A DNA stretch of 64,000 nt from Lepidodermella squamata (GCA_047495785.1 JBLDXI010000021.1:1054001-1118000); one strand, 5' to 3'; shown: positions 1 to 59,724, counted from the first letter of the stretch. Made by a program: numbers and translations. The notes: generated from the sequence alone by a model not told the origin.

Positions 1-913
1 TACCGGTAATATTTCGCGGTCGATTGAATCGAAGTCGACGTAACAGTGTTGTTACATTTCCCAGCTCGTTGCCACGCTTTGAAGGGTAGTAATTGGCTCA
101 AATTCAGGTAGGTTTGAGCTGAATAGTCTTCGAGTTCAATTGCCGAAAAATTGCTGATTAATTCTGAATAATCAGCCTCGAATTCTCCAGTTCCTGTGTG
201 GACTGGCTCGACCATGAAGGCAACAATTGCTAGGCCATCTTGTTTATTCACGCTGTTCTTATAGGATTTATAAGCCTGGTTGTAGTGGACGAATTGAATT
301 TCGAGCGGCGTCGCCCAGTACTCGTCGCCTTGTAGATGCTCGGAGCCGCGCGTGCATGACCCCTCGTTGATCACGTCGCCCCAATGAAAGGCAATGTGGT
401 CGAGGATGTACCACGAATTAAGGGTGCTGCCTGAAATTCGAGGCAAAAGTCGCGTTTCGTTAATTGCATTTGCAGACAAGGTCCACGTTACTGTATAATT
501 TTTTTAAATTTTCAAAAAATTAATTAAAAAATCAAAATTAAAAACCGATTCTCCCATTGTTCTGCAAAACTCCTGGGAACGACCGTGACTCATCCGGGTA
601 GTTGTCGAACCGCAGAGGGTCCTTAACCAGCTTGTCGCTGTATTCCGCATGGGCGGGTGCGAGATAAATTGGCGATTGGTACTTGCCATTGCCGCATAAA
701 GGGTAACTCAAAGGCCACGCACTGATATCTGTAATTCACCAAATTTCGTGAGCGCAATGTAGTGTGATCGTTTATTTTACTTGTATAAGTCCAATGAGGA
801 TCCACTGGTCCGATAACCGTGTTGTTATATTGGCAATTGATCGGAAAAATTAATAAGGACAGAGTAAATAGCAGTGAATCATAGCGCTGATTGATCAGTG
901 TAGAATAAATCAT
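1..913 (-). CDS. CA0: secreted alpha-carbonic anhydrase-related protein (predicted acatalytic); 3' end runs off the window
   Basis: Spliced minus-strand model (exons ~913-780, ~729-546, 490-1): signal peptide, HWTY, C..GKYQSPI, NNGRI, ILDHIAFHWG (His94>Ala), GSEH, EIQFVH (His119>Gln), DGLAIVAF, KYYR. Confidence 0.88.
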
Positions 914-2423
914 TTTAAGGTGGTTTATTTTGAAACAATAATAAATGTTTTGAGGGTATCAGCGAGAGCCAGCAACATGTGTGGCCTTCGGTAACTTTTA
1001 GCGAATGCGCATATTTAAAACGGAAATTGTTAGCCGCGGTGAGTGATGCGGCTCTGAAAACACGTTATTCAGTCATCATCACTCATCACCGAGGTCAACG
1101 CATCAAATTACACTACCCTCGCCCACCGTCAGGCCACAATAGCTATTATCTTTCCTCACTTGGCCAGGTCACTTCCAAGTTGGGGCAAAAAATACGAGAA
1201 CTGCGTGGCTTTCATTGACTGAAAACGATAATTAAAATTGTACTTGCTATATTTCGGCAGCAGAAAACAGCTTTATTCCAGTGCAGTGTGACTCACCAAT
1301 TATTTTCGCTCCAGGTCAGCAGTTCATTATCGATATCATATCGTTATTATTATCGATCATAGCGATGATCGGCCGCTTTCGATAATAAATGCAGTAATAA
1401 ATAAAGAAATGAATTTTCAGAGTGCTTTTAGCGAACGATCGGCTTGTAATATGATTTTTTGAGAATTGCTTCATTAGGAGTAAAAAATCATTGCCTGGTA
1501 TAGACGAAAGTTATTTCAATGTGATGGATAGAAATAGAATGATAGAAAAAACTGCACCTTTATAACACATTTTGCCAGAATTTATCCTATTTTCAGCAGC
1601 ATTTACTGTGTGCTTTTAGTTCAAATGACCAAATGAATCAGTTTTATTTTCGTCGCTAGCTGCACCCGCGCGCTGGGTGCACAGAATTTGCTCGCTACAC
1701 CCTCGGGTGCAGGATTATAGCTAGTTACACCCAGAAGGTGCGCGAAAATAGCTGCGTGCACCCGCATCTGGGTGCGACCATTTTGCTACGTACACCCAAT
1801 ACATTTGATTGGACGGTAATGAAATCACGGGTGCAGAGAGAAAAACCCTTGTCTATTGTGTCTATTCCTCCAAGGAAAAACCGCTACACCCACTTGACCG
1901 CGCGCGGCGGCTAGAGAGCCATTCATTGCGCGCCAAGGAGTTAATAATCTGTCCGGTGCCGCTGATCAATGTCATAAGTTCAAGAGTCGAGGCCTTGAAG
2001 ATATGGCTGAAAGCGCAGGCCGATTTCCAGTGTGCAAACCGAAAGCAACATCAATAGGATTAAGACGGTCGCGAGTTGGGCGCAATACCACCGCCGCTAC
2101 CGTTCAATAACACCACTAATCAATATTCTCGAGCCGGTCTTCAATAACCTATTACCGCCCGGCTTCCTGCCTTGAACTCGTGCACCCATTGCTTGATGTT
2201 CACCTGGAGATCAGTGTTTCCCTCGTGACCCGCAGAATGCACCATGACGGCTATGATTGCACCCGCAGCGCCAGAGTCGGAGCGGAAAAAAACAAAGAAA
2301 TCGTAACCGCCAATCGTCGACTTCAAAGCCGGCTGCTCCACTTCCGGGTGCCCTACTCAGGAGCGTCTGCTTGTTTCCAACTGGGGTGACTGTAGGCAGC
2401 GGGGTCACTTTGACACTTGGACT

Positions 2424-2495
2424 AATTCCTATTCCCTATTCCCTCAATTCCTATACTCTTCATTCCTATTCCTACAATTCCTATTTTCTATTCCT
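2424..2495. repeat. Degenerate (ATTCCT)n micro/minisatellite
   Basis: attcctattccctattccctcaattcctatactcttcattcctattcctacaattcctattttctattcct. Confidence 0.6.
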
Positions 2496-2873: not shown

Positions 2874-3858
2874 TAGAAATTGAAAAAAATGCCGCGACTT
2901 TACATATTATGTCCTCTCCCAAAATGGGTTGTTATGATGCGCATTGTGCAAATTCAGGCTGGCGGCTGGCCTTTCCTTGGGCTATCCAACGGTACCCCAC
3001 TCACTAGGTCTTTACCTTACCATATTCGATTTTTGGCATGCCAAAGTCACCCATTCTGGCAAGTCAAAGTGACCCTATTGTGCAAAGTGCGCTAATAAGT
3101 CACCCCAGGTACGTAATCTCGCTAGCTCGCATTTTACCTTGTTTAATTACTTCCGTACACCTTGCCGCACCGACCTTGGAGGAATAGACAGCCGGCTTTT
3201 TCCTAATTCCTTATTGTTTGTATACAGGGTGTAGCGAGTCAAATCGTCGCACCCACACTAACGCGCGGTATAGGGTGTAGCGAGCAAAGTGGTTGCACCC
3301 TTAGGGTGTAGCTAGCAAATCGGATGCACCCGCGTGTGGGTGCAAATAGCACACTCGTTTTATTTTTCGTCCTCCGTAGACGTGTGATGTTAAGAGAGTA
3401 GAAAAAAGCCTTACCCGTGAGGGTTTAGGGGACGCTTGCTTCAAGTTCAACGAATGAATAATAATAAAAGATTAATAATGAATAAATGCAGAGGGATCGA
3501 CTGAATGTTACAGCAGAGTAAACCATGTCTACTTAAGACATGTAGTCCGCATTATTTGAATTCCACGTAGCTCTTTCTACCTAATACTCACATTAGGTAA
3601 AAAATGACTTTTGGTGATATAAATTGTATCATATGGGGAAAATGTGACCTGTCATTATTAATTCCCCTCCTTCATGTTCCTCTGAGGCACGTCCGCCTCA
3701 GCCGCTCCAGGTGAGGCGGCTGTGTTAATCTTCTTTCAAACCACTTTTCAAGTTCTGTGAATTATGCGGCTTTTGTCGCTTAATCTTCCATGCTGACTGT
3801 TGGTTGTTGGATATGCTTTTAATCAGGTGAGATATTGTTTATTATTAGCACTAATAAT

Positions 3859-7054: not shown

Positions 7055-8325
7055 ATGAGTTCGGGTGTGCGATCACCGCTACTAAAAGTAAAATTTTGAC
7101 TCTATTAAAATAGAATTTTTCTGAGAATTCATTTTTCCAGCTTATATTGATAATAGTCTTGTCAGATGCTGGAGCTGATTACGTTTTTCATTGGACCTAT
7201 ATGGGTAAGTAAAGTCACATCTGACCCATATTCTGACCTAATTTTATTGCTCACTGTTGAAGATTTCTCGCATTGGGAATTGGTCAGCCAAGTTTGCGTT
7301 GATGGGAAGAGGCAATCGCCGATAAACATCGACACCAGCAATGCCGTTGTCGAGGAGAGTCTTCAGTCCGATCGGCTTTTGTTCGATAAATACTCTGGCA
7401 ACTTCGCAGGTGATTACTTCAACAATGGCCACACGGTTCAATTTACGATGAGTTCATCCATCGAGCCGAGCAAGCGGCCTCGCATCAGAGGCGGCGGTCT
7501 CGGCGAGAAAGGCTACATTTTCGAGCAGTTTCATTTACATTGGGGCAACTCAACGACTGGGCGAGACGCGGCGCGGGGGTCTGAACACGCGATAAACGGC
7601 AATTTTGGCCCGGCCGAAATTCATTTCGTCCACTACAATGCGAAGTACGCGTCTTTTGCCGACGCAGGATCGCACGATGACGGCCTGGCTGTTGTTGGAT
7701 TTTTGTTCGAGGTTGTCAATGATACTTGGCTGGTTCGAAAATCTGAAACTGACTACTCGACCGAATCACAACTGGTGCATAATATCATGTTTGAAGGGAA
7801 CAAAAGTAATTTATTGATCGATTTTCTTACTAAATTTTTTAATTGTTTTAATTCGAAAGCAACTGCATCATTCAACTTTGGGAAGCTTATTCCTGAGTCT
7901 GTGCTGGATGGGAAGGATGCATTTTACCGCTACGATGGGTCTCTAACTACACCACCATGTAAGTGCAATCAGATTTCATCTTTCAGCCAAACTAAAAATT
8001 CGATTTTTTAGGCTCTGAAATCGTGACATGGACAGTTTTCGACCGAAGAATCCCAATTTTACCGGCAACTTTGGATGAATTCCGGACATCTAGCATGCTG
8101 GAAATCGACGAAAGTCATAACACTATTGCCGTGCCTATCCTTAACAACTTCAGACCACTGCAGAGCCTGAATCGTCGGACGGTGAAAATCGGCAGATACG
8201 TGCCACGCGAACGAATAAAAAACGCCCAGGGTAGAAGCAGTGCATCGAAATCGGTTGATAGCAAAATTCCAGTACTATCAATCCTAATCTTGACAATTTT
8301 TATGTCATCGCCGTGCGATGAGTGA
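7055..8325 (+). CDS. CA1: alpha-carbonic anhydrase, secreted/GPI-type, predicted fully active
   Basis: MSSGVRSPLLK|LILIIVLSDAGA signal; NNGHTVQ (His64), QFHLHWG, GSEH, EIHFVH, GSLTTPPC, NNFRPLQ; hydrophobic C-terminal tail; 5 exons. Confidence 0.93.
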
Positions 8326-8721: not shown

Positions 8722-10155
8722 ATGACGGTGAGTTTTTCGATTATTTTTATTAATTTTCTAAAATTTAAATGAAATTCCAGTCGATGCGGCTGTTTGAAAT
8801 AACTGCGATTCTTTTCATCTGGAACTTGAACAGCCGTTCTATTGCTGCCCCGGTCGCGTCATCATCGCCTGCTTGGACTTATCTAGGTCTGGATTACTTT
8901 TTCCTGTGAATAACAGACCGTAAATATTTTCCTCATGACATTCCAGACTTCAATCAATGGGGCTCTGTCAACCCGGTTTGCAATGCCGGTAGTCAGCAAT
9001 CACCTGTTAACATAGCTACAACCAGTCTGGTCAAAGACAGCGCCTTGGCTCGCGATAAATTGATGTTCGATCGGTACCAGAGCTCATATAATGGAACCTA
9101 TGTCAACTTGGGCTATACAGTTCAATTCAACATCGACCCATCGATTGAACCTGAGAAGAGACCTAGAATCTACGGTGGCGGTCTAGGAGATGCTGGCTAC
9201 ATTTTCCAACAATTTCATTTTCATTGGGGTAAAAATAGCGAATTTAAGATCGATTTAACCTTAAATCGAATAATTTCAATCAAGGAAATACGAGTGATTG
9301 CAAGGGCGACGCTTGCATAGGCGCCGAGCATTTAATCGATGGAAAATCGGCCCCAGCTGAGATTCATTTCGTCCACTACAACGCGAAATATCCTTCACTT
9401 AACGCCGCTGTTTCGAACAGCGACGGCTTGGCTGTAATTGGATTTCTATTCCAAGTCGAAAGCGATCCGGGCAAGATTAATGTCGATTATGGGGATGAAA
9501 TGCTCTTGATCGCCAACATTAGCTACCAGGGTAGCCAAGGTTAAAGCGTGCGAGATAATATAGACCAATTTTTTAATTTTTTTAAAATTTTTTCCAGTGC
9601 GAAAAGATTTTGATTTCAGTAAATTGATTCCACCGAATGCGATGAAAGGAAACGGAAAGTTTTATCGATACAGCGGCTCCTTGACAACTCCACCTTGTAA
9701 TATTTTTTTTATAATTTTTTCATAATTTTTTATGGGTGTAATTGTTAGGTGCGGAGGTTGTTACTTGGACCGTTTATGAAGAGCGAATTTCGGTTTCAGC
9801 TGCCGCGCTGAATTATTTCTTCATGGCAACCGCTAATAGTTCAATCAGTGGCGCGATTGAGCCAATAATCAACAACTTTCGCCCAGTTCAACCTCTCGGC
9901 AATCGCTACATCCGCGTCAATCTACCCGAAGATCCAGTTACAACGACGAAGCCTATTGATGTAACATCCTCGAAACCGCAGGTTGCTGTGACTACAACAG
10001 CGGCTTCACCTAATAATGCTAATACTACGACGATGGCTCCGACTACGGTCGCCGCGACGGCTGTTACAGCTAAAGGCCTTGCAGCAACCATTTCGAGCTG
10101 TTCAACGGCTGTGATTGCCTGTGGTCTCCTGGCCGTTTTAATTCCTAACTACTAA
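8722..10155 (+). CDS. CA2: alpha-carbonic anhydrase with Thr/Ala-rich stalk and GPI-like tail
   Basis: QFHFHWG, GAEH, EIHFVH, GSLTTPPC intact; His64>Tyr (NLGYTVQ); C-terminal TTT-rich stalk then hydrophobic tail. Confidence 0.92.
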
Positions 10156-10688: not shown

Positions 10689-11960
10689 ATGCTGCTTCAA
10701 GTCGCGTTTTCGCTCAATTTTCTGTTCCTGTTGTTCGCCGAAGTATCTGGCACGTGGAAATCAACGTTAAGGTGGACTTATGCAGATTTCAAGCAGTGGT
10801 CGCAAATCAGCTCGGTTTGCGCTGTTGGGAAGCAGCAGTCACCCGTAAGGATTGTAACATCCGCCGTGGCGAAGGACGTAGATTTAGCGAAAGATAGGCT
10901 CTATTTCGACCGCTACTCGGCAACTCAAAGCGGGACTTATTGGAACACGGGCCAACTCGTTCAATTTACGATCGATCCATCGGTCAAACCTGAGAAAAGG
11001 CCGCGGATTTACGGCGGTGGTCTCGGCAAAGCTGGCTACATCTTCGAGCTATTCCAGCTGCATTGGGGTGAGAAAAAAATCGTATTAATTAATTTATCTA
11101 ATTTTGAACACCCTAGGAAATTCAACGGATTGTTTGGCATCGCCTTGCACTGGGGCTGATCATGTTATCGATAACCGAACTTACCCGGCTGAGATACATT
11201 TTATCCACTACAACGCGAAATATGGGTCATTTGTCGACGCTGTGAGATACCAAGACGGCTTGGCTATTGTCGCTTTTTTGTTCCAAATTGTCAACAATAC
11301 CAAGCTCATAAATACACATTACAACAATGTCACGTCCGGGGTAGATGAAATACCCTACATAGGGGACAAAGGTAATTATTTTTTAATTTTTTTTATCATT
11401 ATCAATGATTTCGTTTATAGCGAACGCATCTTTCGATTTCGGAGCTTTGATACCACCATCGGCTAAGGATGGCAAAGGAATTTACTATCGATATAATGGC
11501 TCCCTGACTTACCCACCCTGTAACAATTGTTTAAATTTTTTTCTTAAAAAATCAGTAATTTTTTTTTTAAATTTTAGGTGCCGAAATCGTTATGTGGTCG
11601 ATTTTCGACGCTCCAATCGCGATTTCTGCGGCCGTTTTAGATCTACTTCAGGACGCGACTTCAAGATGGCTCGAGGAGGAAACGGGCGATTTGATCGATG
11701 TTTCTATCAGCAACAACAACCGGCCTCTTCAGGACTTGAATAAACGTGTCGTAAAATCGAACCAAATGCCGTCGGCGAAGGAGCTTGAACTGATAGCTAA
11801 ACAGCAAGCATCCGCTCGGCCGCCGACTACAGTCGCCTCAGCCACGCAATTCGCGCCGATTGAGCAGAAAAGCAGCGATAAAACAAGCGCCGTTGTTCAA
11901 GTCAGGGCGCATTTTATTGTCTCGTCATTGTTTATTCTCAGCGGCGTTTTCTTGAAATAA
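10689..11960 (+). CDS. CA3: alpha-CA-related protein (His94>Gln), GPI-like tail
   Basis: Signal peptide; FELFQLHWG, GADH (Glu106>Asp), EIHFIH, GSLTYPPC, NNNRPLQ. Confidence 0.9.
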
Positions 11961-12479: not shown

Positions 12480-13753
12480 ATGAAACTTCTTGTCGGGAAG
12501 GTACCACTTTAAAATTATACCATATTTCAATTATACTGATTCTGTTTCAATCAGTTATTGGCCTCAATTTTGTTGGTTGAGCTTGCGAGAGCTTCTCCAA
12601 CAGGTGGCGCCCAGGGTGCCCCGAAAATCGGAGCGGATAATCCGAACTTCCACTGGAATTACGAAGGTCCGGAAATAGTTTTTCCATCCTAATTATAATT
12701 TTATTTTTATTTTAGACTTCGAAGCATGGAAACAGTCTGCAGCCGTTTGTATGGCCGGCAAGAGGCAATCACCCATCAATATCGCAACGAATGCAACGGT
12801 TGGTGATGATAAACTGGTTAAGGATGCTCTCTTATTCGACGGCTACAACGGCTCAATTAACGGCACATATTTCAACAACGGCCACACCGTTCAATTCTCG
12901 ATTGACCCGCGGATAGCAGCGGATAAACGGCCGAGAATTTACGGCGGCGGCCTCGGCAAGAAGGGTTACATTTTCGAGCAGTTCCACTTTCACTGGGCCA
13001 ACGGCACCGTGCCTGGCTGCGAGCATACGATCGACGGGAAGGGCGCTCCGGCCGAGGTTCATTTCGTGCACTACAACTCTAAGTACACGTCGATCGGCGA
13101 GGCGATTAAACACCCTGATGGCCTGGCTGTTATCGGCCTGTTCTTCGATGAAGTCAAGGACGGAAGTCTTGTCAAGGTTGACTACACAATGACGGCAAAT
13201 CTCATTTCTGCCGTTGATGAGGAGGGCGAAAAAAGTGACTTAGACCTTTATTTATTGCGCAGCCTTAATTGCGATGTTTTTTATTATAGCCGTCGCATCG
13301 TTCGATTTCTCGAAGCTTATTCCAGCAGGTGTGTCTGCAGGCAAGGAAACCTATTACCGGTACGACGGCTCCCTGACCACCCCGCCATGGTAAAATTGTG
13401 TAAAAATCTGATATTTATTTCAATTTAATCCCATCTATAGTGCTGAGGTTGTAACTTGGACAGTTTACGAGACTCATGTTCCAATTTTATCCGCAACAAT
13501 CGATGCCTACCGCAAGGCTAGTATGCATGCCGATCTTAAAGCTTTCAACACAACCAGCGTACCGATCGACCACAACTTCCGCCCGGTTCAGCCTCTGAAT
13601 GGCCGCGTTGTTAAAGCCAACAAGGCCGGTAAGGGCAGTGCGGTGGTTCAAGGACTGACGGCCAAGGCGAAAAATGGTGCCATTTCCGGTTTCGACATCA
13701 GTTATCTTACTTCACTGGCCGTAGCTGTGATTGCTGCTATTCTGAACTTTTAA
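12480..13753 (+). CDS. CA4: alpha-carbonic anhydrase, GPI-like tail, predicted fully active
   Basis: MKLLVGK|LLASILLVELARA signal; NNGHTVQ, QFHFHWA, GCEH, EVHFVH, GSLTTPPC, HNFRPVQ. Confidence 0.93.
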
Positions 13754-14264: not shown

Positions 14265-15555
14265 ATGCATCTGCGACTCGCTTTGGTATGTCTGCGATTA
14301 ATTGCGGCAATATATTGCTGAAGATCAATTTTTTCAGATTTTCCTCGCAATTGAATTTTCTAGTCAAGCCTCAGACTGGAATTACTTAGGTAAACTAATA
14401 TTTTTCCATTCTCACAAAAATAAATTCAATTTTTTTTAGACTTCAATGGCTGGTCACAGGTCAATCAAGTCTGTGGAGCCGGGAACAGGCAATCGCCTAT
14501 AAACATTGAAACTTCGCAAATTGTTGTCGATCAATGGCTAGCCCGCGATCCAGTCGTCTTTCAGTACTTTAGAGTACCTGGTGACTATGCTAACAACGGC
14601 TATACGGTTCAATTCACGATCAATTCGTCAGTCCCGCTAAATCAGCGGCCTAGAATTTACGGCGGCGGGCTTGGATCTAATTTCATTTTCGAACAATTCC
14701 ACTTTCACTGGGGTGAGCAAAAAAATTAACGAGTCAATTTTTTTCAAATTTTTTCAAATTTTTAAAATCTAATTAAATTGCGTAAATTAAATAAATTAAC
14801 AATTTTATTTTTAAGAATTTTAAATTTTATTTTTCTTTAAATTTCAGGTGATAACATGATGGCTTGCCGAGGTGCTGAGCACACAATCGATGGCCGGTCT
14901 GCTCCGGCCGAGGTTCATTTCGTTCACTGGAACGCTAAATATGGATCTTTCTCCGACTCGCTGAAATACCCGGACGGTCTCGCTGTAGTCGGATTCCTCT
15001 TTGAACCTGTCGATTATCACGGCAGTTTGAATACGGATTATTCCTTACCGGCCCAGCTTATTAGCCAGATTTCCCGGCCGGGACAAAAAAGTAATTCAAT
15101 TTTAAATCGCCAAGGGTTATAATAATTTTCATTAAATCCTAGTAATTGCCAATCTTGATCTAAATGCCTTGATCCCTCCTGCCGCCTATCAAGGATCAGG
15201 CGCTTTCTACCGCTATGACGGATCTCTAACAACACCTCCTTGGTATACATTCAGCTATTTTCCCCCTTCGATGATGTTTTGGTACTTTTACAGTGCTGAA
15301 GTTGTGATCTGGACGGTTTTCGACTATCGCGTTCCCATGCTGACGTCGATGCTTAATCAATTTCGAACTGCTGTAGCAAGCGAAACGGCCTATGCTGGTC
15401 GGCAAACGACAATTGTCAACAACTACAGGCCGGTTCAAAGGCTGAACCGGCGCGTTGTTCGAGCCAACCGGTACCCAGATTCGAAGGCATCTCTAGCTCA
15501 AGGAAGCTGCGTCACCGTTGTAGGACTGGCTTTGTTCCTCGCGTTTTTCTCATAA
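14265..15555 (+). CDS. CA5: alpha-carbonic anhydrase, GPI-like tail
   Basis: MHLRLAL|IFLAIEFSSQA signal; NNGYTVQ, QFHFHWG, GAEH, EVHFVH, GSLTTPPC, NNYRPVQ. Confidence 0.92.
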
Positions 15556-15929
15556 AATCTCCTAAATTAGCAAAATAATCATGACGACAAGTAATTGTAA
15601 ATCAAGCTGATAAAAAATTAGAATGTTTTTGAAATTCGAAATTAAAGTAAAAATCTTACCCGTTTTGAATCGATTCGCATTTTTTCTTGCATTTTCTCAC
15701 ACCAATTAACCTATTTGCGAGGACAAGATTAAAAGAGGTGTGTTGACTCACAATTTTTTTTAGTTAAAAAAACAACAACTAAAAGGTGCGGAAAGCGCGC
15801 GCTCAAATGGGCTCTGGGCTCCCTTTCAGTGTGGGCAAATATTTAAACAAAACCAAAAAATGGAACGAGCCTTGGGCGATCTGGAAAGGGCTCACAGCAT
15901 TGAAAGTGGGTACAGCTGTTGGATAAACA

Positions 15930-18802: not shown

Positions 18803-18813
18803 ATTGCTGGTCC

Positions 18814-28039: not shown

Positions 28040-29147
28040 TCAACACCCGCCGCCTACCCGGTTAGGATCTGGATTGGCGCGCACCGTGCGGCCGCTTAGA
28101 GCGTAGGTCAATGTTCGGCGAGTGTTTATCAAGTCCGCGTCGCCATCGCCCTTGAGCCCCTTGAACGACGAAATCGATAGGATGTAGATAGGTCGCCAGT
28201 AGACAAACCACTTGACGCCCTCGGTGCCTGAGAAAAATGGAAACAATTTGCTTTGCATATCAGAACAAGCATCATAACATACAAGGTGGAAAGGTCAGCG
28301 AGCCTGTGTATTTGTAATACTTTTCCCAAGTCGCCCAATTTGGCAGGAGAGCTCCGAAGTCTAAGCTGAGGGATACGCTGGATTTCGGCTGGCGAACATT
28401 TGTCAGCTGGCTGAAAACTGGGCGCCAAGCAATGGCTCCCGACGCTTCATTATTGGATTCTGCATTTAACAAGAAAGCCGTCGCTGCTATGCCGTCAGCC
28501 TTGCCCTCCGCCTCGGCGTAGTTGCTGTACTTGGCGTTGAAGTGCAGGAACTGAACCTCACCAGCGCCCTGGTTGTCATCGACAAAGTGCTCAGATCCGC
28601 ACGTTTTGTACTTGTCGCATTTAGTAGCTTTAAGATCACCTGATGATAAATTTTTTATAAAAACTGAAATTTTGAATTCGACTAAAATTATCACCCCAGT
28701 GGAGAATGAAGCGATCGAAAACGAATGTGCCCTCGTCTATCGTAATTTTAGGCCGACTGCCTTTGGCCAGGCCTTCATCGGCGACGAACCTAACGTGTTT
28801 GCCAGTGTTTTCAAGTTTCCCGGAAACTTGGACGCCGTAGTTGCCCATTTCGAACTTGAGGCTTGGCTGGACTGTTGGAGCTGGATCTCGAAGTCTTATA
28901 TTAACCGGCGACTGTTGGGTACCGCTGAGACAAACTGGGCTGACATTGGCCCAGCCATTCAGGTCTAAAATAGGTGAAAAATATAAAAATAATACTACTG
29001 TCACTACCCTCGATTGTACCTTTGTAGTTCCAGTCTTGGGCAACGGCGGCTGCAGAAATCGCCACCGCCACAAAAATCAACTAAAGAATAATTATCAAGA
29101 GTGGAGAAACCGAGTTTCATAGGGAATTTTACCTTTGAGAAGAACAT
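28040..29147 (-). CDS. CA11: secreted alpha-CA-related protein, close paralog of CA10
   Basis: FDRFILHWG, GSEH, EVQFLH, GSLTFPPC; exons, introns and flanks closely match CA10. Confidence 0.9.
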
Positions 29148-31209: not shown

Positions 31210-32366
31210 ATGGCGGTTATCTTGGTAAAAATTTGCGTGGGAGTTGTCGCGAATATTCACTATTGATTTTATTGCCGACAGACTTTGGCAGCCGTCGTCG
31301 CTTTCGCGGCGTGCGCTAACGCTGGCCCGGCGTGGACTTACCAAGGTAAAATTTTACCTAGTCATAACAATCGCCTATTTCACGGTTCAATGATTCTCTC
31401 TGCAGATATTCAGGGTTGGGCGGATACGGCGGAAATCTGCGGCAGCGGCAAACAGCAGTCGCCCATCGCCATCGCCGGCCGCATCATCAACACCCCGAGC
31501 CTCAAGACCACCTTCATCAAGTACAACGTCGACCTCAGCGGTGACATGACGAACGACGGCCGAAACATTGTCTTCGTCGCCAACGCTTCGATGGCCAAGG
31601 CCGATCGCCCGCAAATCAAGCTGTCCGAGGGTGCTGACAAGTACGCCCTTGACCGCATCGTCTTCCACTGGGGTTTGGCGTGAATTTTTCTAGAATTTTC
31701 TCGAATTAATCCCTCGGATTTTTTATAGGCAACATTTCGCAGTGCCAGGCTAACAAGCCGTGCCTTGGATCTGAGCATCTCGTCGGCGGCAGGCCGAACC
31801 CAGCCGAGGCGCAGCTCATCCACTTCAACCTCAAGTACGACAACGCGAGCGCCGCCGAGTCGAAGAAGGACGGCCTGGCTGCTATCGCCTTCCAGCTGAC
31901 CCTCGTCCGCGGAAAGACGCCCGATGCTGACTGGCTCCAGGCCATGAAGGCCCTGCCCAGCCTCAAGGACGAAGGCTCCACCACCACTGTTAAGCTCAAC
32001 CTCACCACCATGATCCCGAAGTCGGCTGCCAACGGCAAGGGCCGCTTTTTCCGCTACACTGGCTCCCTCACCACCCCATCATGTAAGGATAAATTCCTCA
32101 ATTTCTAGAAAAATCTGATTCATTTTTCGATGTGTAAATCAGGCGCTGAGGGTGTCAAGTGGACCGTTTACGCCGAGCCCGTGGAAATTCTGTCGCTGTC
32201 CAACTTCAACCTGATCACGTCCAAGGATGAGAACAACAAGACATCGAAAGTCGTCAACAACTTCCGCGCAGTTGAGCCGCTCAACGGCCGCCCGATCCGG
32301 TCGAACAAGCCCGGCAACATCGGCGGTGGTCCCGTCATTCCCTTCCCCTTCCTCCTGTTCGGCTAA
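31210..32366 (+). CDS. CA12: secreted alpha-CA-related protein (predicted acatalytic), strongly codon-biased
   Basis: MAVIL|TLAAVVAFAACANA signal; LDRIVFHWG (His94>Val), GSEH, EAQLIH (His119>Gln), GSLTTPSC, NNFRAVE. Confidence 0.92.
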
Positions 32367-35039: not shown

Positions 35040-36594
35040 ATGATAATCAGCGTAAGTTTTACTGATTTTTCGTTTCAATAAATTAAAAAAAGAAAATTAA
35101 TTTAGGTTATCCTTCCAATTATTGCCTGTCTGCTGCTCGGCGCAAAAGCTGAATGGTTTTATTCAGGTTAATTATTCTAATAAATTCCATATAATTTTTC
35201 ATTGAAATTCTGATTATTTTCCAAGATCTCGATGCCTGGTACGATATAGACGAAAAATGTACGGATGGCATGCACCAATCACCGATTAAAATTGAATCCA
35301 GCCGGGTGGTCTACGCGCCTAATCTTGACAATGATAAACTGAAGTTCGAAAAATACGACCTGGCCTACAGTGGATTCCTAACAAATAGCGGCCGTTCAAT
35401 CTACTTTACTATCGATCCTAATTCAAGAGCAGACCGCCGCCCTAAAATTTCTGGCGGCGGTTTGAACAATCAGAACTTCGTTTTCGAACAATTCATCCTT
35501 CATTGGGGTAAACTTTTTTGAAAAATCAAATTTTGAAATTATTAGTTTTTTATCCCAGGTGCTAATGATTGCGAAGCAACGAACTGTAAAGGCTCTGAAC
35601 ACTCTATTGACAACAAATTCGCCCCGGCTGAAATTCAATTCGTCCATTACAACGCGAAGTACAGGACGTATGGCGAGGCTGCGGAGAGAGACGATGGACT
35701 TGCCGTAGTCGCTTTTCAGTTCGACAATGTCCAGGACCCTAACTTGGTTAAAACCGGCTATAAAGCTATGGCTAAATTGGTGTCGAGAATCGCCGCTCAA
35801 GCATCCAGCTGTGAGTTGATTTTAAAATAAATTGAAATTTAATTGAAATTCGATTTTTTATAGCTGCCGTCGCGTTCGATTTTAGCAAAATTATCCCAAC
35901 ATTCGCAACGGATGGCTCAGGCCGTTACTATCGTTACAATGGGTCATTGACAGCACCGCCTTGTAAATAATTTTTTAGGAGGATTTTTCATAATTTTTTC
36001 AAATTTTTTAAAGGCTCAGAATCCGTCATTTGGTCTGTGTTTGAGCCTCGAATTCCCGTAATGCCCTCTACCCTAGCGGCTCTTAGAGTCGCCCAAACGA
36101 TCGATGAAGAAGGAATGGTTGTCCCGCTGGTCAATAATTACCGCCCAATTCAGTCCCTCAATGATCGTGTAGTTCGCACTAATAAGCGCCTGGTTCAAAT
36201 AAACGCGCCTCAGCCTGCAGTATTGGTTCAAAATACCCCACCCCAACTGCAACAAATTCGACCTTTAGTCGCCATGCAAGCGCCTTCGTTACCCGCCCAG
36301 CCTGTCGCTCCACCCGCCCCGCCGGCTGTATTTCCGTTCATTTTTCAAACGCAACCGCCGCCGCGAACTGTGGCGACTACGGCGGCGCCGTGGAACCCTC
36401 GAAATAACAATAATAACAACATTTTCCAGGAATTCACCGGCAATTCTAACAACAACTTCGGAGTGCCATTTGCTAACAACTTTGGCGTGCCGTCGTTGTT
36501 TGGCAGCAGCAATAACAATAATAACCGCGGGCAGAATAATCAGTTCTTCGGCGGCGGTAACGTGTTCGACGGCTTCCCTAACTGGATGGGATAG
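35040..36594 (+). CDS. CA13: secreted alpha-CA-related protein with Pro/Gln-rich then Asn/Phe/Gly-rich tail
   Basis: FEQFILHWG (His94>Ile), GSEH, EIQFVH (His119>Gln), GSLTAPPC, NNYRPIQ; ~130-aa low-complexity tail. Confidence 0.92.
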
Positions 36595-37037: not shown

Positions 37038-38222
37038 ATGATTTACGGAAAAATAACCTCGGTAAATTTAATTTCAACTTAAAATTATTCCATTTTTCAT
37101 TTTTATTAATATCAAGTCGATTGTGTTTCTGGCGTCCTTAAATTTGGCTTTGGGACAGAACGACTGGTCTTACAATGGTATTTTTATTATTCAATAAAAT
37201 TAAGTTACGGAATTTTCATTTATTAGACACGGATGCTTGGAGTGCTAATAAGAACTATGCCGTTTGCGGGAATGGTCGCCGTCAGTCGCCGATTCGGATT
37301 TCATCTCGCCAAGCCCTGACCGATCGAACACTGGCTAATGACCCACTTCAATTCTCCAACTACGGCGATCAATTCATGGGAACGTTTTCAAACGAAGGCC
37401 AACTCGTTCGATTCACGCTGGACAGCAAAATTCCGCGGGATAAGCGCCCGCGAATCTACAACGGCGGCTACGGGCAGAACGGCCAAGTTCTGGAGTACAT
37501 CGAATTCCACTGGGGCGTCAATTCGTCGGTAAACCGCGGCTCTGAGCACATTATCGATGGGCGCGGAGCTCCGATGGAGGTTCAGTTTGTTCACTACAAC
37601 GGGCGGTATGAGAGTTACAACGATGCTAGGAAGCTCAATGACGGCCTGGCGATAGTTGCATTCCTATTTGAGCCTATCAACGACACGGACTTCATCGCAA
37701 CCGACTACGCCCAATTCGCCAATGCCATGCCTAAAATCGCTCGTCAAGGCGATAAAGGTCAATTTTTTATATTTTAATAATTTTTTAATATTTTTTTTAA
37801 ATTTAGCTCAAGTCACCATTGATTTTTCAAAGCTTTTGCCGGCGTGGGCTCCACGTGGTGATGGCATTTATTTCCGATATTCCGGATCCCTGACTAGCCC
37901 ACCTTGCTCGGAAATCGTCTCATGGACCGTTTTCCAGCGTCGCATTATGATTTTAGACACAGTCATGGATATCTACTTCCAGCATGTCATGACTAAAACC
38001 TGGGAGGCCAATAAGAGCGCCCTGGCTCCTATGGCTAACAATAACCGGCCCGTGCAGTCGTTGAATGGCCGCCAGGTGAGAACGAACCGCGACATTACGC
38101 CGGCTTACAATCGCGAGGTGGCTCAAGAGGCGCTGAGATTAGCCCGCAACCGAACCCAGCCAGCTAAACCATTCACCTGCTGGGGTGCTTTCTTGTGCCT
38201 GCCTTACCCCGATAGCAACTAA
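37038..38222 (+). CDS. CA14: secreted alpha-CA-related protein (predicted acatalytic)
   Basis: LEYIEFHWG (His94>Glu), GSEH, EVQFVH (His119>Gln), GSLTSPPC, NNNRPVQ; tail KPFTCWGAFLCLPYPDSN. Confidence 0.91.
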
Positions 38223-38472: not shown

Positions 38473-39937
38473 ATGGGAATTTTTCGATTTCTAGTTTTCG
38501 CGTCTATTTTCGGGAAAGTTCTGAGCCAAAATACAACAGTTCGAACGTCGTCGAGCCAAACGTCGACTACAACCGCTTCGATTACTACGACACTTCAAGC
38601 GTTGACTAAAGCTACAAAGTCAAATTTACCTTCTTTCATCAGCCAAGCTCCATGGACCTTTGAAGGCTAGATTTCAGCCTAAAATTAATTAAAATTAACC
38701 TATAATTTTTTTCAGAGGAGAATAGATGGGGTATTATCAATGAAGTCTGCGTCAAAGGCAAACGCCAGAGTCCGATCGCAGTGTCCCTCGAGGATGCTAT
38801 TCCCTCGCAAAAACTGAAGAGCGAATCGTTGATTTTTCGAAGCTACGACACCCGTGTTGCGGGGAAACTAGTGAATACCGGGCGGTCGGTGATGTGGATG
38901 ATTGACCCGAAAACCGTGTTGACTCAAACGACCCCAAGCGTGTCGGGTGGTGGGTTACCGCCAACTGGTAGCGCAGGTTACGCTCTAGGTCAAATCGTTT
39001 TCCACTGGGCTAGTAGCGACATTGAATCTGCTGGACTTGGATCGGAACACGTTGTAGAGTGAGCGATCAAATTATCACATAGTTCAAGGCCTTGAAAAAT
39101 CTATTTAACTCAGGTACAGGGCAGCTCCTTTGGAGGTTCAATTTATTCACTACAGCACGGCCTATAAAAGCATCGAGGACGCCATAAAAAATTTGACTAA
39201 CCCTGACAATCTAGCAGTTCTTGGTAGGCCGTTTCTTATATTAATCTAGAGAATGCAACTCTCTTTTCCAGCATTTTTGTTCCAACCAACCTCTGATGGC
39301 AATTTTACATCAAAGACAAATTATTCGAGCATTATTGAAAGATTAGATGACATTTCCGATCCGTTATCTGCAGGTTTTAATTTTTCTAATTTTTTCAAAT
39401 CGGTTCATTATTTTAAACTGATTTAAGTTGATTTAACAATCGACATGTCTAAGCTTCTGCCGGATTTCGCCAAAAATGGGGTCTACTTTCGCTACGATGG
39501 CTCGCTTACTATTCCGCCGTGCTCTGAAGTCGCGAAATGGACGGTTTTTCGCGACAGAATAACGATACCCGCTTCAGATCTGGAAGAGTTTTGGGATCAA
39601 ATTTGGGCTAGCAGCATTTCATCAACTACCCCTATGACAACTAAAGCAGCGACTGCAGTTACCGGTAACGATGGCGATGATGACGACGATTATTGGTATT
39701 ACCCGGGCACAAAAATGCGATTTTATCGATCACTTCAAAAACGAAACGGGCGCATGGTTTGGACGAATGGTAAATGGCCTGATTTGTCGATAAATTTAGA
39801 TTTTTTAGCCTTTTCACGCAGGTAATGGTTTGGCATCTCCGTCAGGCTCTCATACCTGCGAGCCTGCGTCTTCTAAGATTTTCCTGGCAACAGCCGTCGT
39901 GACTTTTATTCAATTTATTAGGCTTAACGGCAACTGA
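38473..39937 (+). CDS. CA15: alpha-CA-related protein with N-terminal Ser/Thr stalk and GPI-like tail
   Basis: LGQIVFHWA (His94>Val), GSEH, EVQFIH (His119>Gln), GSLTIPPC; first intron needs a GC donor at 38666. Confidence 0.82.
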
Positions 39938-40227: not shown

Positions 40228-41729
40228 ATGAAGCTTGAAGTGAGGTTTCTATTTCTTCTGGTAATATCGGGACAGGTCAAAGCTGAGAATACGACATCTT
40301 CGGAAATTTCGTCAAATTTTACGCGAAAATCGGAGATTCCTGAAGTGGCATCGGCTAAATTATCTGTCGAGCCTGTCGGTCAGAGCAATTTTTCGGTAAT
40401 TCAGTTGAATGAAACCCTAGTCAAAAGCCGAGTAGTCGCTAGAACGGCCCAACAATCGAGCAATACTTCAGTCGCCGCCATTCGAGTTAAAGCAGCTGAG
40501 CCATCTGCCGATATGTTAGTTGCTGTTACAACCCAGCAGCCGGTTTCGACCAGTCCGGGGACGACAGTGTCTGCAGCTACGACAACCGCCCCTCCAGCCA
40601 CGACTACAACGCCGAAAATGCAAAATTTGCTAGCCTTACAGTGGTCGTATGCTGAAATGGACAACTGGGGTAGGCTGAGTCCGATTTGCTCGAACGGGCC
40701 GAAACAATCGCCGATTCATCTCGGCCTCGAATACGCGGTCGCCTCGAAAGATTTTTCAATGGATCCGATCGTTTTCAAAAATTACGACGTCAAAGGGTTA
40801 AGTGGGAACTTTACCAACAACGAGCACACAGGTGAGATTTGGCCTTGAAAAAAATTCAATAATTTTTTTGAATTTTTATATAGCAACCTGGACCCTTGAC
40901 CCTAACCAGCAGACTAGCAAAGCTGTCCCAACAATGAGTGGCAGTGGTTACGGGCCTTCGATCTACGTCCTAGACCAGATCACCTTCCATTGGGGTTCAG
41001 ATCGTATCGATGGGTCCTGTAAAGGTTCGGACCATGCCGTCGATTATTCCCCAGCGCCGATGGAAGTTCATTTCATCCACCGGAATACTCGTTACGCAAG
41101 CTATGCCGATTCTGTGTTCAAATACGATGGCCTGGCAATTGTTGGTAGGTCACCCTAAAAAAAATTTCACGGCCCAAATTAATTTTTCTCCAGCCTTTTT
41201 GTTCCAGGCTGTGGAGGATATGCCGATGGGTAACCAATCGACGCTGTTTTACCAGCAATTTTCGAATCGTTTGGAGGAAATTCGCTACCCTAATGCTTCG
41301 ATCTCTTTATCCATTGATATGCAACAACTTTTCCCACCTTTCGCTCTAAATTCGCGAAGTGTATTTTTCCGCTACGACGGATCTTTAACTACCCCACCTT
41401 GTGTGGAATCTGTCTCGTGGACAGTTTTCCAGGAACGGATCCCGATTCAGGCCAGTGTTTTATCAGCTTTTCGCCGTAGTCTATGGATTAAACCACCACC
41501 GGGCGTTCAAAAGCCTTACATTGTCATGGAGAATAATTACCGACCTATACAACCTGCGGGTGACCGATTGATCTGGACAAATGGTAAATTTTGGAAGAAT
41601 ATAAGATTTTTTCTGAATTTTCTTTTTTCAGGCAGAGGATTGGCGACATTATCAGCAGGTAGTGTGAAGGCGTCTTGGATTGCGTTAGCTTCAACGCTAC
41701 TGCTGGCTTCAGTAGTCAGCTCAAATTGA
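40228..41729 (+). CDS. CA16: alpha-CA-related protein with mucin-like N-terminus and GPI-like tail
   Basis: Signal, ~110-aa Ser/Thr-rich region, LDQITFHWG (His94>Thr), GSDH, EVHFIH, GSLTTPPC, NNYRPIQ. Confidence 0.9.
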
Positions 41730-42169
41730 TTTCGAAGCGCAAATTCTCAGCTGTTTATAAATTATTTCTCGAAACATTTGCTGTTTTATTTTATTTGTAA
41801 ATTTCATGCATATTGTTCTACTCTTAATAATATAGCAACTATTTAAAAATTTGTTCTTTATGTGTTTTCGAAAATAAATATATTTTTTGACTGTAATACT
41901 TTGAATTTTTTACTTTTCACGTCTCGTCATCCCAGAAATAGCGGAAATTAATTGCGAGCCTATTGAGATTGAAACCTACTTGAGCTCGCAAAAAATGGCG
42001 CGATAAAGGAAGTTGCGGATCTATGCGCTATTATTCTCACGTAAAAAAACGTGATCGAAGAATTGAAAGGGCTCAATAAAGCGTGAATTTTCTAGGGTAA
42101 AAGCGTAAATTTCTCTTGGAAAAAAACAATTTTCATAATAGCAAATATTTTAGTACACCTGGAATAATA

Positions 42170-43543
42170 ATGCAGCTGCGAAATTTCGTTACAGTAGCCC
42201 TAATAGCCATGTCTTGGCGGGTCGAAGCTCAAGTAGCTCCAGTAGCTACCGCGAAACCTTCTACGTATGACTGGTCTTATGACAGTAAGGACGATTTCAA
42301 TACTTCGAAATTGAAAAAATTTCAAATTTTAGATGCTGATAAATGGCCGGATACGTGCGCGAATGGGGTAAGGAATTGAGTTGCATCAAATTTGAAAATA
42401 AATACTTTATTCCACCATAGGATCGGCAAAGCCCAATAGCTCTGAGTATGGATGATGCTATCACCGCTGATAAATTGAAGAAGGACAAGATTGTTACCAC
42501 AAATTACGACAAACTATTCAACGGTCAGCTGAAAAATACCGGCCAGATGGGTTAGTCCTAATTTGCTTCAAGGAATGATGAGTCGATTTTTTGCGTGACC
42601 TAGTTTCATGGGACATTGACCCTCAGCCTAGCGGGATCGCTCCGTCGATAAGTGGCGGCGGCCTTGGTTCAACGTACATTTTGCAATCTTTCCATTTTCA
42701 CTGGGGATCCGAATTCATCGGCCGGAGTTGTACCGGGGCAGAGCATGTTGTTGAGTACACGTCTTCGCCACTTGAACTTCACGTCATCCACTACAACAGC
42801 AAGTACAGCTCTATGCAGGAGGCGGCTACGAAGTCTGACGGACTGGCGGTGATTGGTAAGATATTATTGAACTGAAGTTCGAAGGAAGAATTTAATCCCG
42901 ATTTTTCCAGGAATTTTATTCAGAGCAGCACCTAACGATATTAATTACCTACGGTACGACCTGACCAATGTGATATCGCGCCTTCCAAACATCCTTTTGC
43001 CTTCAAATTCAAGTAAAAAATTTTCATCTTAGAGGGCGAACTGAAAATCGGAAATTTTGATTATTTTTAAGCTACGATAACGGTGAATTTTACAAAAATT
43101 GTCCCGGACTTGTCAGCGGCAAATTATTTCCGATACGACGGCTCACTAACAACACCGCCATGTAGTGAGGTAAAAATATTTTAAATTCAATAAATAATTT
43201 TATTTGAATTTTAATACTAGGTTGTTACATGGACGGTATTGGCCGATCCTATTGACATTCCGATTGCTCATCTGCAAAGCCTGCGGACGATAACTAGGAA
43301 GGCACCCAATTTGCTGCTTGAAAACACTTATCGAAAGCTACAGCCCAGGAATGGACGCACGATTTGGACAAATAGCGGTAATTAATTTGAATCCACTTGA
43401 CTGCATTTTAATTGAAATTTCAATCATTTCCAGATGACGGCCAAGATCCACCGGCGCCAGTGGCTACCAAGAACGATGCCGGTCATGTTGGACTAAGCAG
43501 TTTCAAAGTTATTTCACTCGTTCTTATTCTTGCCCTTTGTTGA
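42170..43543 (+). CDS. CA17: alpha-carbonic anhydrase, GPI-like tail, Zn triad intact
   Basis: LQSFHFHWG, GAEH, ELHVIH, GSLTTPPCSE; eight short exons join in frame; tail FKVISLVLILALC. Confidence 0.88.

Positions 43544-56883: not shown

Positions 56884-59724
<2,841 letters not shown>

What the first reader, a model, noticed from the sequence alone, without database searches (positions are those of the whole stretch)
1..43543. Array of 18 secreted alpha-carbonic anhydrase genes, half of them converted to pseudo-enzymes
Seen: 18 CA loci in 43.5 kb (possibly more left of the window), all with signal peptides. The Zn triad is intact in CA1,2,4,5,6,7,9,17 and in pseudogene CA8. His94 is replaced in CA0(A), 3(Q), 10(I), 11(I), 12(V), 13(I), 14(E), 15(V), 16(T), and His119 is Gln in CA0 and CA10-15. 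His96 and the scaffold motifs QSP, GxE/DH and GSL[TS]xP are kept wherever visible. Known: loss of these ligands defines acatalytic CARPs, and the CA-like ligand-binding domains of receptor PTPs gamma/zeta also lack Zn ligands. Inference: intact, divergent reading frames with many different His94 substitutions suggest the fold has been reused as a family of extracellular binding or structural proteins working next to active enzymes. Candidate roles are cuticle/mucus/mineral matrix, CO2 supply to symbionts, or a gland secretion. This is the best candidate for an undescribed system in the window.
Basis: partly seen in the sequence, partly recalled or inferred. Interest (0 to 1): 0.9.

Follow-up and report, generated by a model that had tools for sequence, protein, structure and literature searches.

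The report
Tandem carbonic-anhydrase array, many copies dead
A small invertebrate genome packs 35 neighbouring copies of a secreted CO2-handling enzyme into 80 kb. About 40% have lost their zinc site yet are still kept intact by selection, a large new example of enzymes turned to non-enzymatic jobs, though smaller cases are already described.

Summary
Window 1-43543 holds 18 alpha-carbonic-anhydrase (CA) genes with 43-62 nt introns. Nine keep the zinc triad H94/H96/H119; one of these, CA8, is broken by a 94-nt deletion. Nine have lost ligands: CA0 AHQ, CA3 QHH, CA10/11 IHQ, CA12 VHQ, CA13 IHQ, CA14 EHQ, CA15 VHQ, CA16 THH.

The array runs a further 36 kb to the left, giving 35 domains, 14 of them without a full triad. 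First readers noted that left part on the adjacent window (s1-421981, s1-421994, s1-422087); none was followed up.

The ligand-less copies are not decaying:
- Their frames are open.
- Omega is 0.13-0.17, against 0.13-0.19 for triad-intact copies.
- CA10/CA11 have dN/dS 0.19 (p = 4e-13).
- CA0, CA15 and CA16 have orthologues, also ligand-less, in syntenic arrays of another species found in metagenomes.

The proposed binding or structural role is untested.

Precedents exist: tandem secreted CA-related proteins (CARPs) in cnidarians, and Daphnia's 25-gene secreted CA radiation. I therefore rate this a new, unusually large variant of a known kind, of moderate interest.

The parts
1..913 (-). CA0. 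Triad A-H-Q, Arg at position 64, signal peptide MIYSTLINQRYDSLLFTLSLLIF, hydrophobic GPI-like C-terminal tail. The 791-nt main exon runs off the left edge of the window to -300.
   Evidence: Orthologue M23a (L-H-Q, R64) in a metagenome contig, SH-aLRT 99. AF2 of the large exon gives pLDDT 78.8; best PDB matches are CA XII and CA II.
7055..8325 (+). CA1. Triad HHH with His64, E106 and T199, so fully canonical. Signal peptide and GPI-like tail.
8769..10155 (+). CA2. HHH with Tyr64. Signal peptide, Ser/Thr-rich linker and hydrophobic tail.
10689..11960 (+). CA3. Q-H-H, E106 replaced by D. Sister of CA2. Signal peptide and hydrophobic tail.
12480..13753 (+). CA4. HHH with His64. Signal peptide and GPI-like tail.
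14265..15555 (+). CA5. HHH with Tyr64. A 7-codon first exon followed by a signal-peptide exon. GPI-like tail.
15929..17160 (+). CA6. HHH with Phe64. First exon MFRGVNS followed by a signal-peptide exon. Hydrophobic tail.
17730..18802 (+). CA7. HHH with Phe64 and Ser199. N-terminus not resolved. Tail ends NWIPNFLTNIFF.
19880..20842 (+). CA8. HHH, but a 94-nt deletion in the last exon removes the strand carrying W209 and shifts the frame if the conserved acceptor is used. Probable pseudogene.
22345..23760 (+). CA9. HHH with Tyr64. Signal peptide [19 protein letters not shown]-terminal tail of about 100 aa rich in Gly, Asn and Leu.
24358..25453 (-). CA10. I-H-Q with Lys64 and Arg92. Signal peptide, no hydrophobic tail, so predicted soluble and secreted.
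   Evidence: dN/dS against CA11 is 0.19.
28040..29147 (-). CA11. I-H-Q with Lys64. A recent duplicate of CA10 (88% aa identity, dS 0.36).
31210..32366 (+). CA12. V-H-Q with Arg64 and Arg92. Signal peptide. The second intron is re-read by eye as a canonical GT-AG intron at 31673-31728.
35040..36594 (+). CA13. I-H-Q with Arg64. Signal peptide. A C-terminal tail of about 130 aa rich in Pro, Gln and Asn.
37038..38222 (+). CA14. E-H-Q. Signal peptide.
38473..39937 (+). CA15. V-H-Q with Arg64. Signal peptide MGIFRFLVFASIFGKVLS. The last exon, after intron 39770-39821, encodes a GPI-like tail.
   Evidence: Orthologue M24a (V-K-Q), SH-aLRT 94-95.
40228..41729 (+). CA16. T-H-H with His64, E106 replaced by D. 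Own signal peptide, then about 130 aa of Ser/Thr-rich mucin-like sequence, the CA domain and a GPI-like tail.
   Evidence: Orthologue M24b is V-R-Q, SH-aLRT 99.
42170..43543 (+). CA17. HHH with Gln64. Signal peptide, seven exons, GPI-like tail. Its syntenic counterpart in the other species (M24c) is K-H-Q.

Best explanation
This is the right-hand 43.5 kb of an 80-kb, lineage-specific tandem radiation of extracellular alpha-carbonic-anhydrase genes. The proteins are predicted to be secreted or GPI-anchored.

About 60% of the domains keep the zinc triad and are probably CO2 hydratases of varying speed. Only CA1, CA4 and three left-flank copies also keep the His64 proton shuttle.

About 40% have lost one to three zinc ligands. 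The commonest pattern is a hydrophobic or acidic residue at 94, His at 96 and Gln at 119, often with Arg or Lys at 64. These copies very probably cannot hold catalytic zinc.

They are nevertheless functional genes. They keep open frames, the structural core, the extracellular disulfide and secretion signals. They evolve under purifying selection as strong as that on their active paralogues. At least three of them have ligand-less orthologues in another species.

Shown here: the anatomy, the ligand losses, the selection and the orthology.

Inferred: they act as non-catalytic CA-fold proteins, that is, new and independently arisen secreted CARPs. My preferred mechanism is ligand or partner binding through the remodelled former active-site cavity or the domain surface, in the same extracellular compartment as the active copies. 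This is by analogy with the neurexin-binding CARPs CA10/CA11 and with the 'acatalytic competitor' idea proposed for cnidarian secreted CARPs.

The zinc site decays repeatedly and is still decaying. CA16 is T-H-H here and V-R-Q in the other species; CA17 is H-H-H here and K-H-Q there.
For: - Family and anatomy: PF00194 E-values of 1e-24 to 1e-50; 114 exon-level hits in the genome, most of them on C21:1018-1097 kb; 35 spliced models without stops; introns of 43-62 nt at positions shared within subfamilies.
- Ligands.
- Extracellular character: Cys23 and Cys203 in all copies; signal peptides in 16 of 18; hydrophobic C-terminal tails in many.
- One lineage-specific clade that mixes live and dead copies: support 99/97.
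- Selection: GY codon-model omega 0.169 and 0.127 for two acatalytic sets, against 0.126 and 0.187 for two catalytic sets. CA10-CA11 show 37 non-synonymous differences over 562 sites against 49 synonymous over 170 sites, Fisher p = 4e-13.
- Orthology and synteny in metagenome contigs L023 and L024: CA0/M23a 99, CA16/M24b 99, CA15/M24a 94. The order M24a-M24b-M24c matches CA15-16-17. Between orthologues pS is 0.79-0.92 and pN 0.32-0.42, and aa identity is 44-53%, the same as for the catalytic pair CA1/M16a.
- Fold: the AF2 model of the CA0 exon has pLDDT 78.8 and pTM 0.75; its best PDB matches are CA XII and CA II at TM about 0.6.
- Expression (indirect): run X1 holds 0.50 and 0.21 of the sampled 31-mers of two stretches whose predicted exon-only 31-mer fractions are 0.57 and 0.28. 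Solving for two compartments gives about 0.9 of exon words and about 0 of non-exon words. X2 gives about 1.0 and 0.44.
- Precedent for function in CARPs: PMC4981384, PMC6487704.
Against: - There is no direct evidence of transcription or protein.
- Nothing shows binding, a partner or a tissue.
- Single-ligand losses (CA3 Q-H-H, CA16 T-H-H) might keep weak metal binding and some activity.
- Synonymous sites are saturated for most comparisons, so omega values are rough.
- Gene models come from my own aligner and contain local errors, for example the CA12 intron and the N-termini of CA6-8.
- Signal peptide and GPI calls are heuristic.
- Whether ligand loss happened once or several times is unresolved. 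The ML tree needs at least 5 changes, but monophyly of all Q119 copies is not rejected (AU p = 0.11).
Confidence: 0.65

Rival explanations
1. The ligand-poor copies are still enzymes or metal proteins. A reduced or shifted ligand set (Gln, Glu, Asp or Thr with the remaining His) would bind zinc or another metal and support CO2 hydration or another hydrolytic reaction.
For: E106, T199, H96, H107, Y194 and W209 are retained in most ligand-poor copies. CA3 and CA16 have lost only H94. From my own knowledge, engineered CA II variants at position 94 still bind zinc weakly; the fold search returned structures of such variants, 1H4N and 1CVC.
Against: Seven window copies have lost two ligands, with Ile, Val or Ala at position 94, which cannot coordinate a metal. 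La, Lc and Ld have lost all three. The proton shuttle is replaced by Arg or Lys in most of them. The retained residues are also structural.
Confidence: 0.12
2. The dead copies are mainly structural or matrix components, for example of cuticle, egg envelope, glue or mineral matrix. On this view the CA fold is only a stable scaffold and function lies in low-complexity tails and glycosylated linkers.
For: CA13 has a Pro/Gln/Asn-rich tail of about 130 aa. CA16 has a mucin-like Ser/Thr-rich region of about 130 aa. The triad-intact CA9 has a Gly/Asn/Leu-rich tail of about 100 aa. Acatalytic CAs occur in octocoral skeleton proteomes according to the title and search listing of PMC7533068, which I did not read.
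Against: Most dead copies (CA0, 3, 10, 11, 12, 14, 15) have no such tail. The CA domain itself is under purifying selection. The tails also occur on triad-intact copies.
Confidence: 0.15
3. The His-less copies are pseudogenes on their way out of a birth-and-death array.
For: Tandem arrays do shed copies. CA8 has a 94-nt deletion. Lb is a fragmentary model, and M23d in the other species is degenerate.
Against: The dead copies keep open exons of 341-791 nt although synonymous sites are saturated. Omega is 0.13-0.19. Orthologues are kept in a second species. The only clearly broken window copy, CA8, has an intact triad.
Confidence: 0.03
4. The array is an assembly artefact, that is, a falsely expanded repeat.
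For: None beyond the general risk with tandem repeats.
Against: Copies are 34-55% identical in protein and differ in intron pattern and tails. An independent run, X2, holds 62-81% of the words. Syntenic arrays exist in another species.
Confidence: 0.01

Closest known systems
Secreted CARPs of cnidarians encoded in tandem with catalytic alpha-CAs (Le Goff et al. 2016, PMC4981384)
   Same: Both are extracellular alpha-CA-fold proteins lacking zinc histidines. In both they arose several times inside the secreted CA clade and sit next to catalytic paralogues. The authors proposed that they act as acatalytic competitors or regulators.
   Different: The cnidarian cases are single genes or pairs per locus. 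Here 14 of 35 domains in one 80-kb array are affected. The triad pattern differs: cnidarians trend toward R-H-Q, whereas here position 94 is Ala, Ile, Val, Glu, Gln or Thr, with Arg or Lys at 64. The phylum is different. Here there is also orthologue conservation across two species.
Daphnia pulex CA6/CA7 radiation (Culver and Morton 2015, PMC4393933)
   Same: Both are lineage-specific tandem arrays of secreted alpha-CAs derived from a GPI-anchored type: 7 and about 16 genes in 32 and 60 kb, 25 in all. Both show switches between GPI-anchored and soluble forms.
   Different: That paper does not report loss of zinc ligands within the radiation. In my tree the present array is not orthologous to the two Daphnia sequences sampled.
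Vertebrate CARPs CA VIII, CA X and CA XI (CA10/CA11 are secreted neurexin ligands, PMC6487704)
   Same: Acatalytic through replacement of H94 and/or H119 (Gln at 119 in CA X/XI). Conserved by selection. CA X and CA XI are secreted binding proteins.
   Different: The array copies are not orthologues, because they nest within the species-specific array clade. They have no R-H-Q motif. Many are GPI-anchored or carry low-complexity tails.
CA-like N-terminal domains of receptor tyrosine phosphatases gamma and zeta
   Same: An extracellular CA fold without zinc ligands, used for protein binding.
   Different: Here there is no fibronectin, transmembrane or phosphatase part. The genes end within 130 codons or fewer after the CA domain.
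Two-domain 'HHH + x-H-Q' CA proteins in public metagenomes (P0256, P0260, P0267, P0275; unnamed)
   Same: A catalytic-type domain is physically coupled to a domain with Val, Ala, Ile or Asn at 94 and Gln at 119. The left flank of this array has a comparable fused gene, Lm Q-H-Q plus Ln H-H-H.
   Different: They form a separate clade outside the array. Their organisms are unknown. They are fused in one chain rather than being separate neighbouring genes.

Membership tests
alpha-carbonic anhydrase (Pfam PF00194) | Significant full-domain match to the family profile | tested here: met
   All 18 window loci cover about 250 profile positions after splicing.
alpha-carbonic anhydrase (Pfam PF00194) | Zinc triad His94, His96, His119 | tested here: not met
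   Met in CA1, 2, 4-9 and 17. Not met in CA0, 3 and 10-16. Half of the genes therefore belong to the fold family but fail the defining feature of the enzyme.
alpha-carbonic anhydrase (Pfam PF00194) | Catalytic helpers Glu106 and Thr199, and proton shuttle His64 | tested here: inconclusive
   E106 (Asp in CA3 and CA16) and T199 (Ser in CA7 and CA8) are kept in all 18. His64 is present only in CA1, CA4 and CA16. The others have Tyr, Phe, Val, Gln, Arg or Lys.
alpha-carbonic anhydrase (Pfam PF00194) | CO2 hydration activity and bound zinc | not testable with these tools
   Needs recombinant protein.
Extracellular (secreted or GPI-anchored) alpha-CA subgroup | Signal peptide, the Cys23-Cys203 disulfide pair, and optionally a C-terminal hydrophobic GPI signal | tested here: met
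   The Cys pair is present in all 18. Signal-peptide-like N-termini were found in 16 of 18. Hydrophobic tails are present in CA0-6 and CA15-17. These calls are heuristic, not from SignalP or a GPI predictor.
CARPs in the broad sense (acatalytic CA-related proteins) | CA fold lacking at least one zinc histidine and kept by selection | tested here: met
Canonical CARP clades VIII, X and XI | Orthology to those clades and the R-H-Q type triad | tested here: not met
   The dead copies nest inside the lineage-specific array clade together with live paralogues, support 99/97. Position 94 is never Arg. No vertebrate CARP sequence was in the tree, so the test is indirect.
Receptor PTP gamma/zeta CA-like domain | CA-like domain followed by fibronectin III, a transmembrane helix and phosphatase domains | tested here: not met
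   Stops follow the CA domains after short tails.
Nacrein-type shell-matrix CAs | Gly-X-Asn repeat domain inserted inside the CA domain | tested here: not met
   The Gly/Asn-rich region of CA9 is C-terminal, not an insert. The organism's mineralisation status is unknown.

The most novel reading that the evidence does not exclude
The x-H-Q copies are not merely inert binders. They would be substrate-trapping relatives of the enzyme. In a cavity that keeps His96, Glu106 and Thr199, has Gln at 119 and has gained Arg or Lys at position 64 in 6 of 8 array copies and in two orthologues, they would hold bicarbonate, carbonate or another anion without turning it over. Together with active neighbours, sometimes fused in one chain, they would form an extracellular enzyme-plus-binder system that buffers, senses or channels inorganic carbon.
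Probability: 0.1. Interest if true: 0.75.

Novelty: new variant of a known kind. Interest (0 to 1): 0.5.

Why it matters
If the inference holds, this locus is one of the largest natural series of enzyme-to-pseudoenzyme conversions in a single gene family at a single locus. Fourteen dead domains sit beside 21 triad-intact ones. Intermediate states are visible: one, two or three ligands lost. Orthologues in a second species have gone further down the same path.

That makes a long-standing question directly testable: how a metalloenzyme fold is re-used after losing its metal, and why secreted CARPs arise again and again.

The locus also provides many natural variants of the CA zinc site for biochemistry.

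It does not reveal a new kind of system. The idea of secreted, tandemly encoded CARPs is already published.

Tried and rejected
- **Read laying.** No reads could be laid at all.
- **Organism identity.**
  - PF00115 (COX1) found nothing in the assembly.
  - A homologue search with the Pitx-type homeobox ORF hit only homeodomains across many phyla.
  - Other agents' notes call the genome 'probably rotifer'; I could not test this.
- **Homologue searches.** Searches with CA1, the CA0 exon and the CA14 exon found nothing above 47% identity. No named close relative exists in the databases.
- **Metagenome neighbour.** The MFS gene next to the metagenomic CA pair is only 39% identical to the genome's best copy, so it gives no synteny information.
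- **Single versus multiple origin of Q119.** The AU test did not decide this (p = 0.11).
- **Complex prediction.** Not tried. Full spliced domains have no contiguous reference, and neighbouring genes alone are not reason enough.
- **Spliced proteins.** They could not be handed to the search or folding tools because they have no reference. Only single exons were used.
- **Aligner artefact.** A GC-AG intron proposed by my aligner in CA12 was rejected after reading the DNA.

Full report
**What is there**

The window is G000:C21:1054001-1118000 of a 121-Mb, 151-contig animal assembly. Its introns are very short, 43-62 nt, and GT-AG.

PF00194 matches occur in ORFs across the first 43.5 kb. A six-frame search with an HMM built from 84 reference alpha-CAs gives 102 exon-level hits between window -36037 and 43376.

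I wrote a spliced profile-to-DNA aligner, tested it on one locus, and modelled every locus. No CA domain needs a stop or a frameshift.

Fifteen further CA domains lie elsewhere in the genome, so it has about 50 in all. All window genes are single-domain. In the left flank, Lo-Lp-Lq, Lm-Ln and Ld-Lc read as multi-domain genes. This agrees with first-reader notes on the adjacent window.

After alignment to the profile, the three zinc positions read as follows:

| Triad (94-96-119) | Copies |
|---|---|
| H-H-H | CA1, 2, 4, 5, 6, 7, 8, 9, 17 |
| A-H-Q | CA0 |
| Q-H-H | CA3 |
| I-H-Q | CA10, 11, 13 |
| V-H-Q | CA12, 15 |
| E-H-Q | CA14 |
| T-H-H | CA16 |

A separate phmmer alignment of the CA14 exon to human CA VI (3FE4) puts Glu opposite His94 and Gln opposite His119.

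In the left flank, La, Lc and Ld have lost all three ligands (E/D-R-Q), Lm is Q-H-Q and Lb is Q-H-H. In total 14 of 35 domains lack a full triad.

Gln28, His107, Glu117, Tyr194, Trp209, Glu106 (Asp in some) and Thr199 are kept almost everywhere. So is the Cys23-Cys203 pair that marks extracellular alpha-CAs.

Only CA1 and CA4 in the window, and Le, Lg and Lh to the left, combine the triad with the His64 proton shuttle.

In the x-H-Q group, position 64 is Arg or Lys in 6 of 8 copies, against 2 of 21 triad-intact copies. This count is descriptive only, because the copies are not independent.

**Gene ends**

N-termini with an ATG and a hydrophobic core were found for 16 of 18 genes, often with a first exon of only 4-7 codons. 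CA7 and CA8 remain unresolved.

Hydrophobic, GPI-like C-terminal tails follow CA0-6 and CA15-17. CA10-14 lack one and look soluble.

Three genes carry long low-complexity regions:
- CA9 has a Gly/Asn/Leu-rich tail of about 100 aa.
- CA13 has a Pro/Gln/Asn-rich tail of about 130 aa.
- CA16 has a Ser/Thr-rich stretch of about 130 aa between its signal peptide and the CA domain.

CA8 has a 94-nt deletion in the last exon relative to CA7.

My aligner had hidden that lesion by choosing another acceptor. I therefore checked the dead copies for the same kind of trick:
- Their intron positions are shared within subfamilies, and their exons are long open stretches of 341-791 nt.
- The one odd GC-AG intron, in CA12, resolves on reading the DNA into a canonical 56-nt GT-AG intron at the position used by CA10.

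**Are the dead copies alive as genes?**

The array, three dispersed copies (C30a, C38a, C74a) and some metagenome proteins form one clade with 99/97 support. Dead and live copies are interleaved within it.

Most paralogue pairs are 34-55% identical with saturated synonymous sites. The duplications are therefore old, and an unconstrained frame would long since have collected stops.

- The young dead pair CA10/CA11 has dN/dS 0.19 at dS 0.36: 37 non-synonymous differences over 562 sites against 49 synonymous over 170, Fisher p = 4e-13.
- A GY codon model gives omega 0.169 and 0.127 for two acatalytic sets, and 0.126 and 0.187 for two catalytic sets.
- The AF2 model of the large CA0 exon is a confident CA fold: pLDDT 78.8, with best PDB matches CA XII and CA II.

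**A second species**

An exhaustive HMMER search of 1.84 billion representatives with the CA14 exon found nothing above 47% identity. It did lead to metagenome contigs of a related, unnamed animal (ENA ERZ23486764 and ERZ27332993).

- L023 carries five CA genes and L024 carries three.
- M23a (L-H-Q, Arg64) is the orthologue of CA0 (support 99).
- M24b (V-R-Q) is the orthologue of CA16 (support 99).
- M24a (V-K-Q) is the orthologue of CA15 (support 94).
- M24c (K-H-Q) groups with CA17.
- M24a-b-c lie in the same order and orientation as CA15-16-17.
- Between orthologues, pS is 0.79-0.92 and pN 0.32-0.42. Protein identity is 44-53%, the same as for the catalytic pair CA1/M16a.

So ligand-less copies have been kept through a long divergence. 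The zinc site is also still being lost: CA16 and CA17 are less decayed here than their counterparts there.

On the ML tree at least five changes of triad state are needed. A single origin of Gln119 is not rejected (AU p = 0.11).

**Expression**

Two run look-ups remain as evidence:

| Stretch | X1 ('RNA?' guess) | X2 | Predicted fraction of 31-mers wholly in exons |
|---|---|---|---|
| 35000-43600 | 0.50 | 0.81 | 0.57 |
| 24300-32400 | 0.21 | 0.62 | 0.28 |

A two-compartment solution gives X1 about 0.9 of exon words and about 0 of non-exon words. For X2 it gives about 1.0 and 0.44. This is what a transcriptome covering most of CA10-CA17 would look like. It rests on two data points and my own gene models, so I count it as suggestive only.

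**Comparison with what is known**

- Polyphyletic secreted CARPs encoded in tandem with catalytic CAs, and the idea that they are acatalytic competitors, are published for cnidarians (PMC4981384).
- Acatalytic secreted CAs are reported in calcareous sponges (PMC4265532).
- A tandem radiation of 25 secreted CAs is described in Daphnia (PMC4393933).
- Decapods have about nine CARPs (PMC13367328).
- CA10 and CA11 are secreted neurexin ligands (PMC6487704).
- Public metagenomes also hold two-domain proteins with an H-H-H domain followed by a V/A/I/N-H-Q domain. They form a clade separate from this array.

The kind of thing is therefore known. New here are the lineage (no close named relative in three large searches), the scale (14 dead of 35 at one locus), the triad pattern (never Arg at 94, basic residue at 64), and the orthologue evidence for long-term retention.

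**Verdict**

I rate it a new variant of a known kind, with interest 0.5.

Noticed in passing
L002-L005 (C21:1017955-1053514, window -36046 to -486): The array continues for 17 more CA domains left of the window. It includes multi-domain genes: Lo-Lp-Lq (three H-H-H domains in one open frame or with linker introns), Lm (Q-H-Q) fused to Ln (H-H-H), and Ld (E-R-Q) fused to Lc (D-R-Q). La, Lc and Ld have lost all three zinc ligands and Thr199.
   Followed up: partly
L024:2181-6259 and L023:2189-10039 (ENA metagenome contigs): A related unnamed animal has syntenic CA arrays. M24a-b-c (V-K-Q, V-R-Q, K-H-Q) match CA15-16-17 in order and orientation. L023 has a CA0 orthologue next to H-H-H copies and one degenerate copy, M23d.
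   Followed up: yes
P0256, P0260, P0267, P0275 (JGI/Logan contigs of about 2-3 kb): These are two-domain CA proteins from unknown organisms, with an H-H-H first domain and an x-H-Q second domain. The dead second domains form their own well-supported clade, an independent case of an enzyme coupled to a pseudoenzyme.
   Followed up: partly
window 3835-4965 (+): A 376-codon ORF encoding a helical-looking protein with no Pfam match sits inside the array, between CA0 and CA1.
   Followed up: no
window, segment between G98 and G104 of many copies (e.g. CA10 24939-24901, CA12 31729-31770): Many array members carry a short Cys-x(3-6)-Cys insertion just after the H-x-H-W-G motif, possibly an extra disulfide loop at the rim of the cavity. 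Examples are CA2, 3, 10-13 and, with one Cys, CA5-9 and CA16-17.
   Followed up: no
window 18700-18802, 20745-20842, 23650-23760: CA7, CA8 and CA9 share a C-terminal ending N-W-[IL]-P-N-F-[LF] followed by F-F and the stop, instead of the GPI-like tail of their sisters CA5 and CA6.
   Followed up: no
window 44198-49389 (-): Several ankyrin-repeat ORFs lie on the minus strand (Pfam Ank families, E down to 1e-25). Another first-reader note calls this a secreted ankyrin protein with Sushi modules.
   Followed up: no
window 56908-58014 (+): A Pitx-type homeobox ORF of 368 codons lies in the most GC-rich part of the window (0.507). Only its homeodomain has database relatives, which shows how isolated this lineage is.
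   Followed up: partly
window 60856-63174 (-): Exons of an ionotropic glutamate receptor (Lig_chan E = 1e-42; Lig_chan-Glu_bd E = 8e-24).
   Followed up: no
G000:C13:392950-407738 and C26:44986-45975: Outside the array the genome has three more ligand-poor CA domains: C13a D-H-Q, C13b F-K-Q and C26a H-H-Q. The first two group with cytosolic-type copies and C26a with a mite sequence. They look like conventional CARPs.
   Followed up: partly
   Followed up: no
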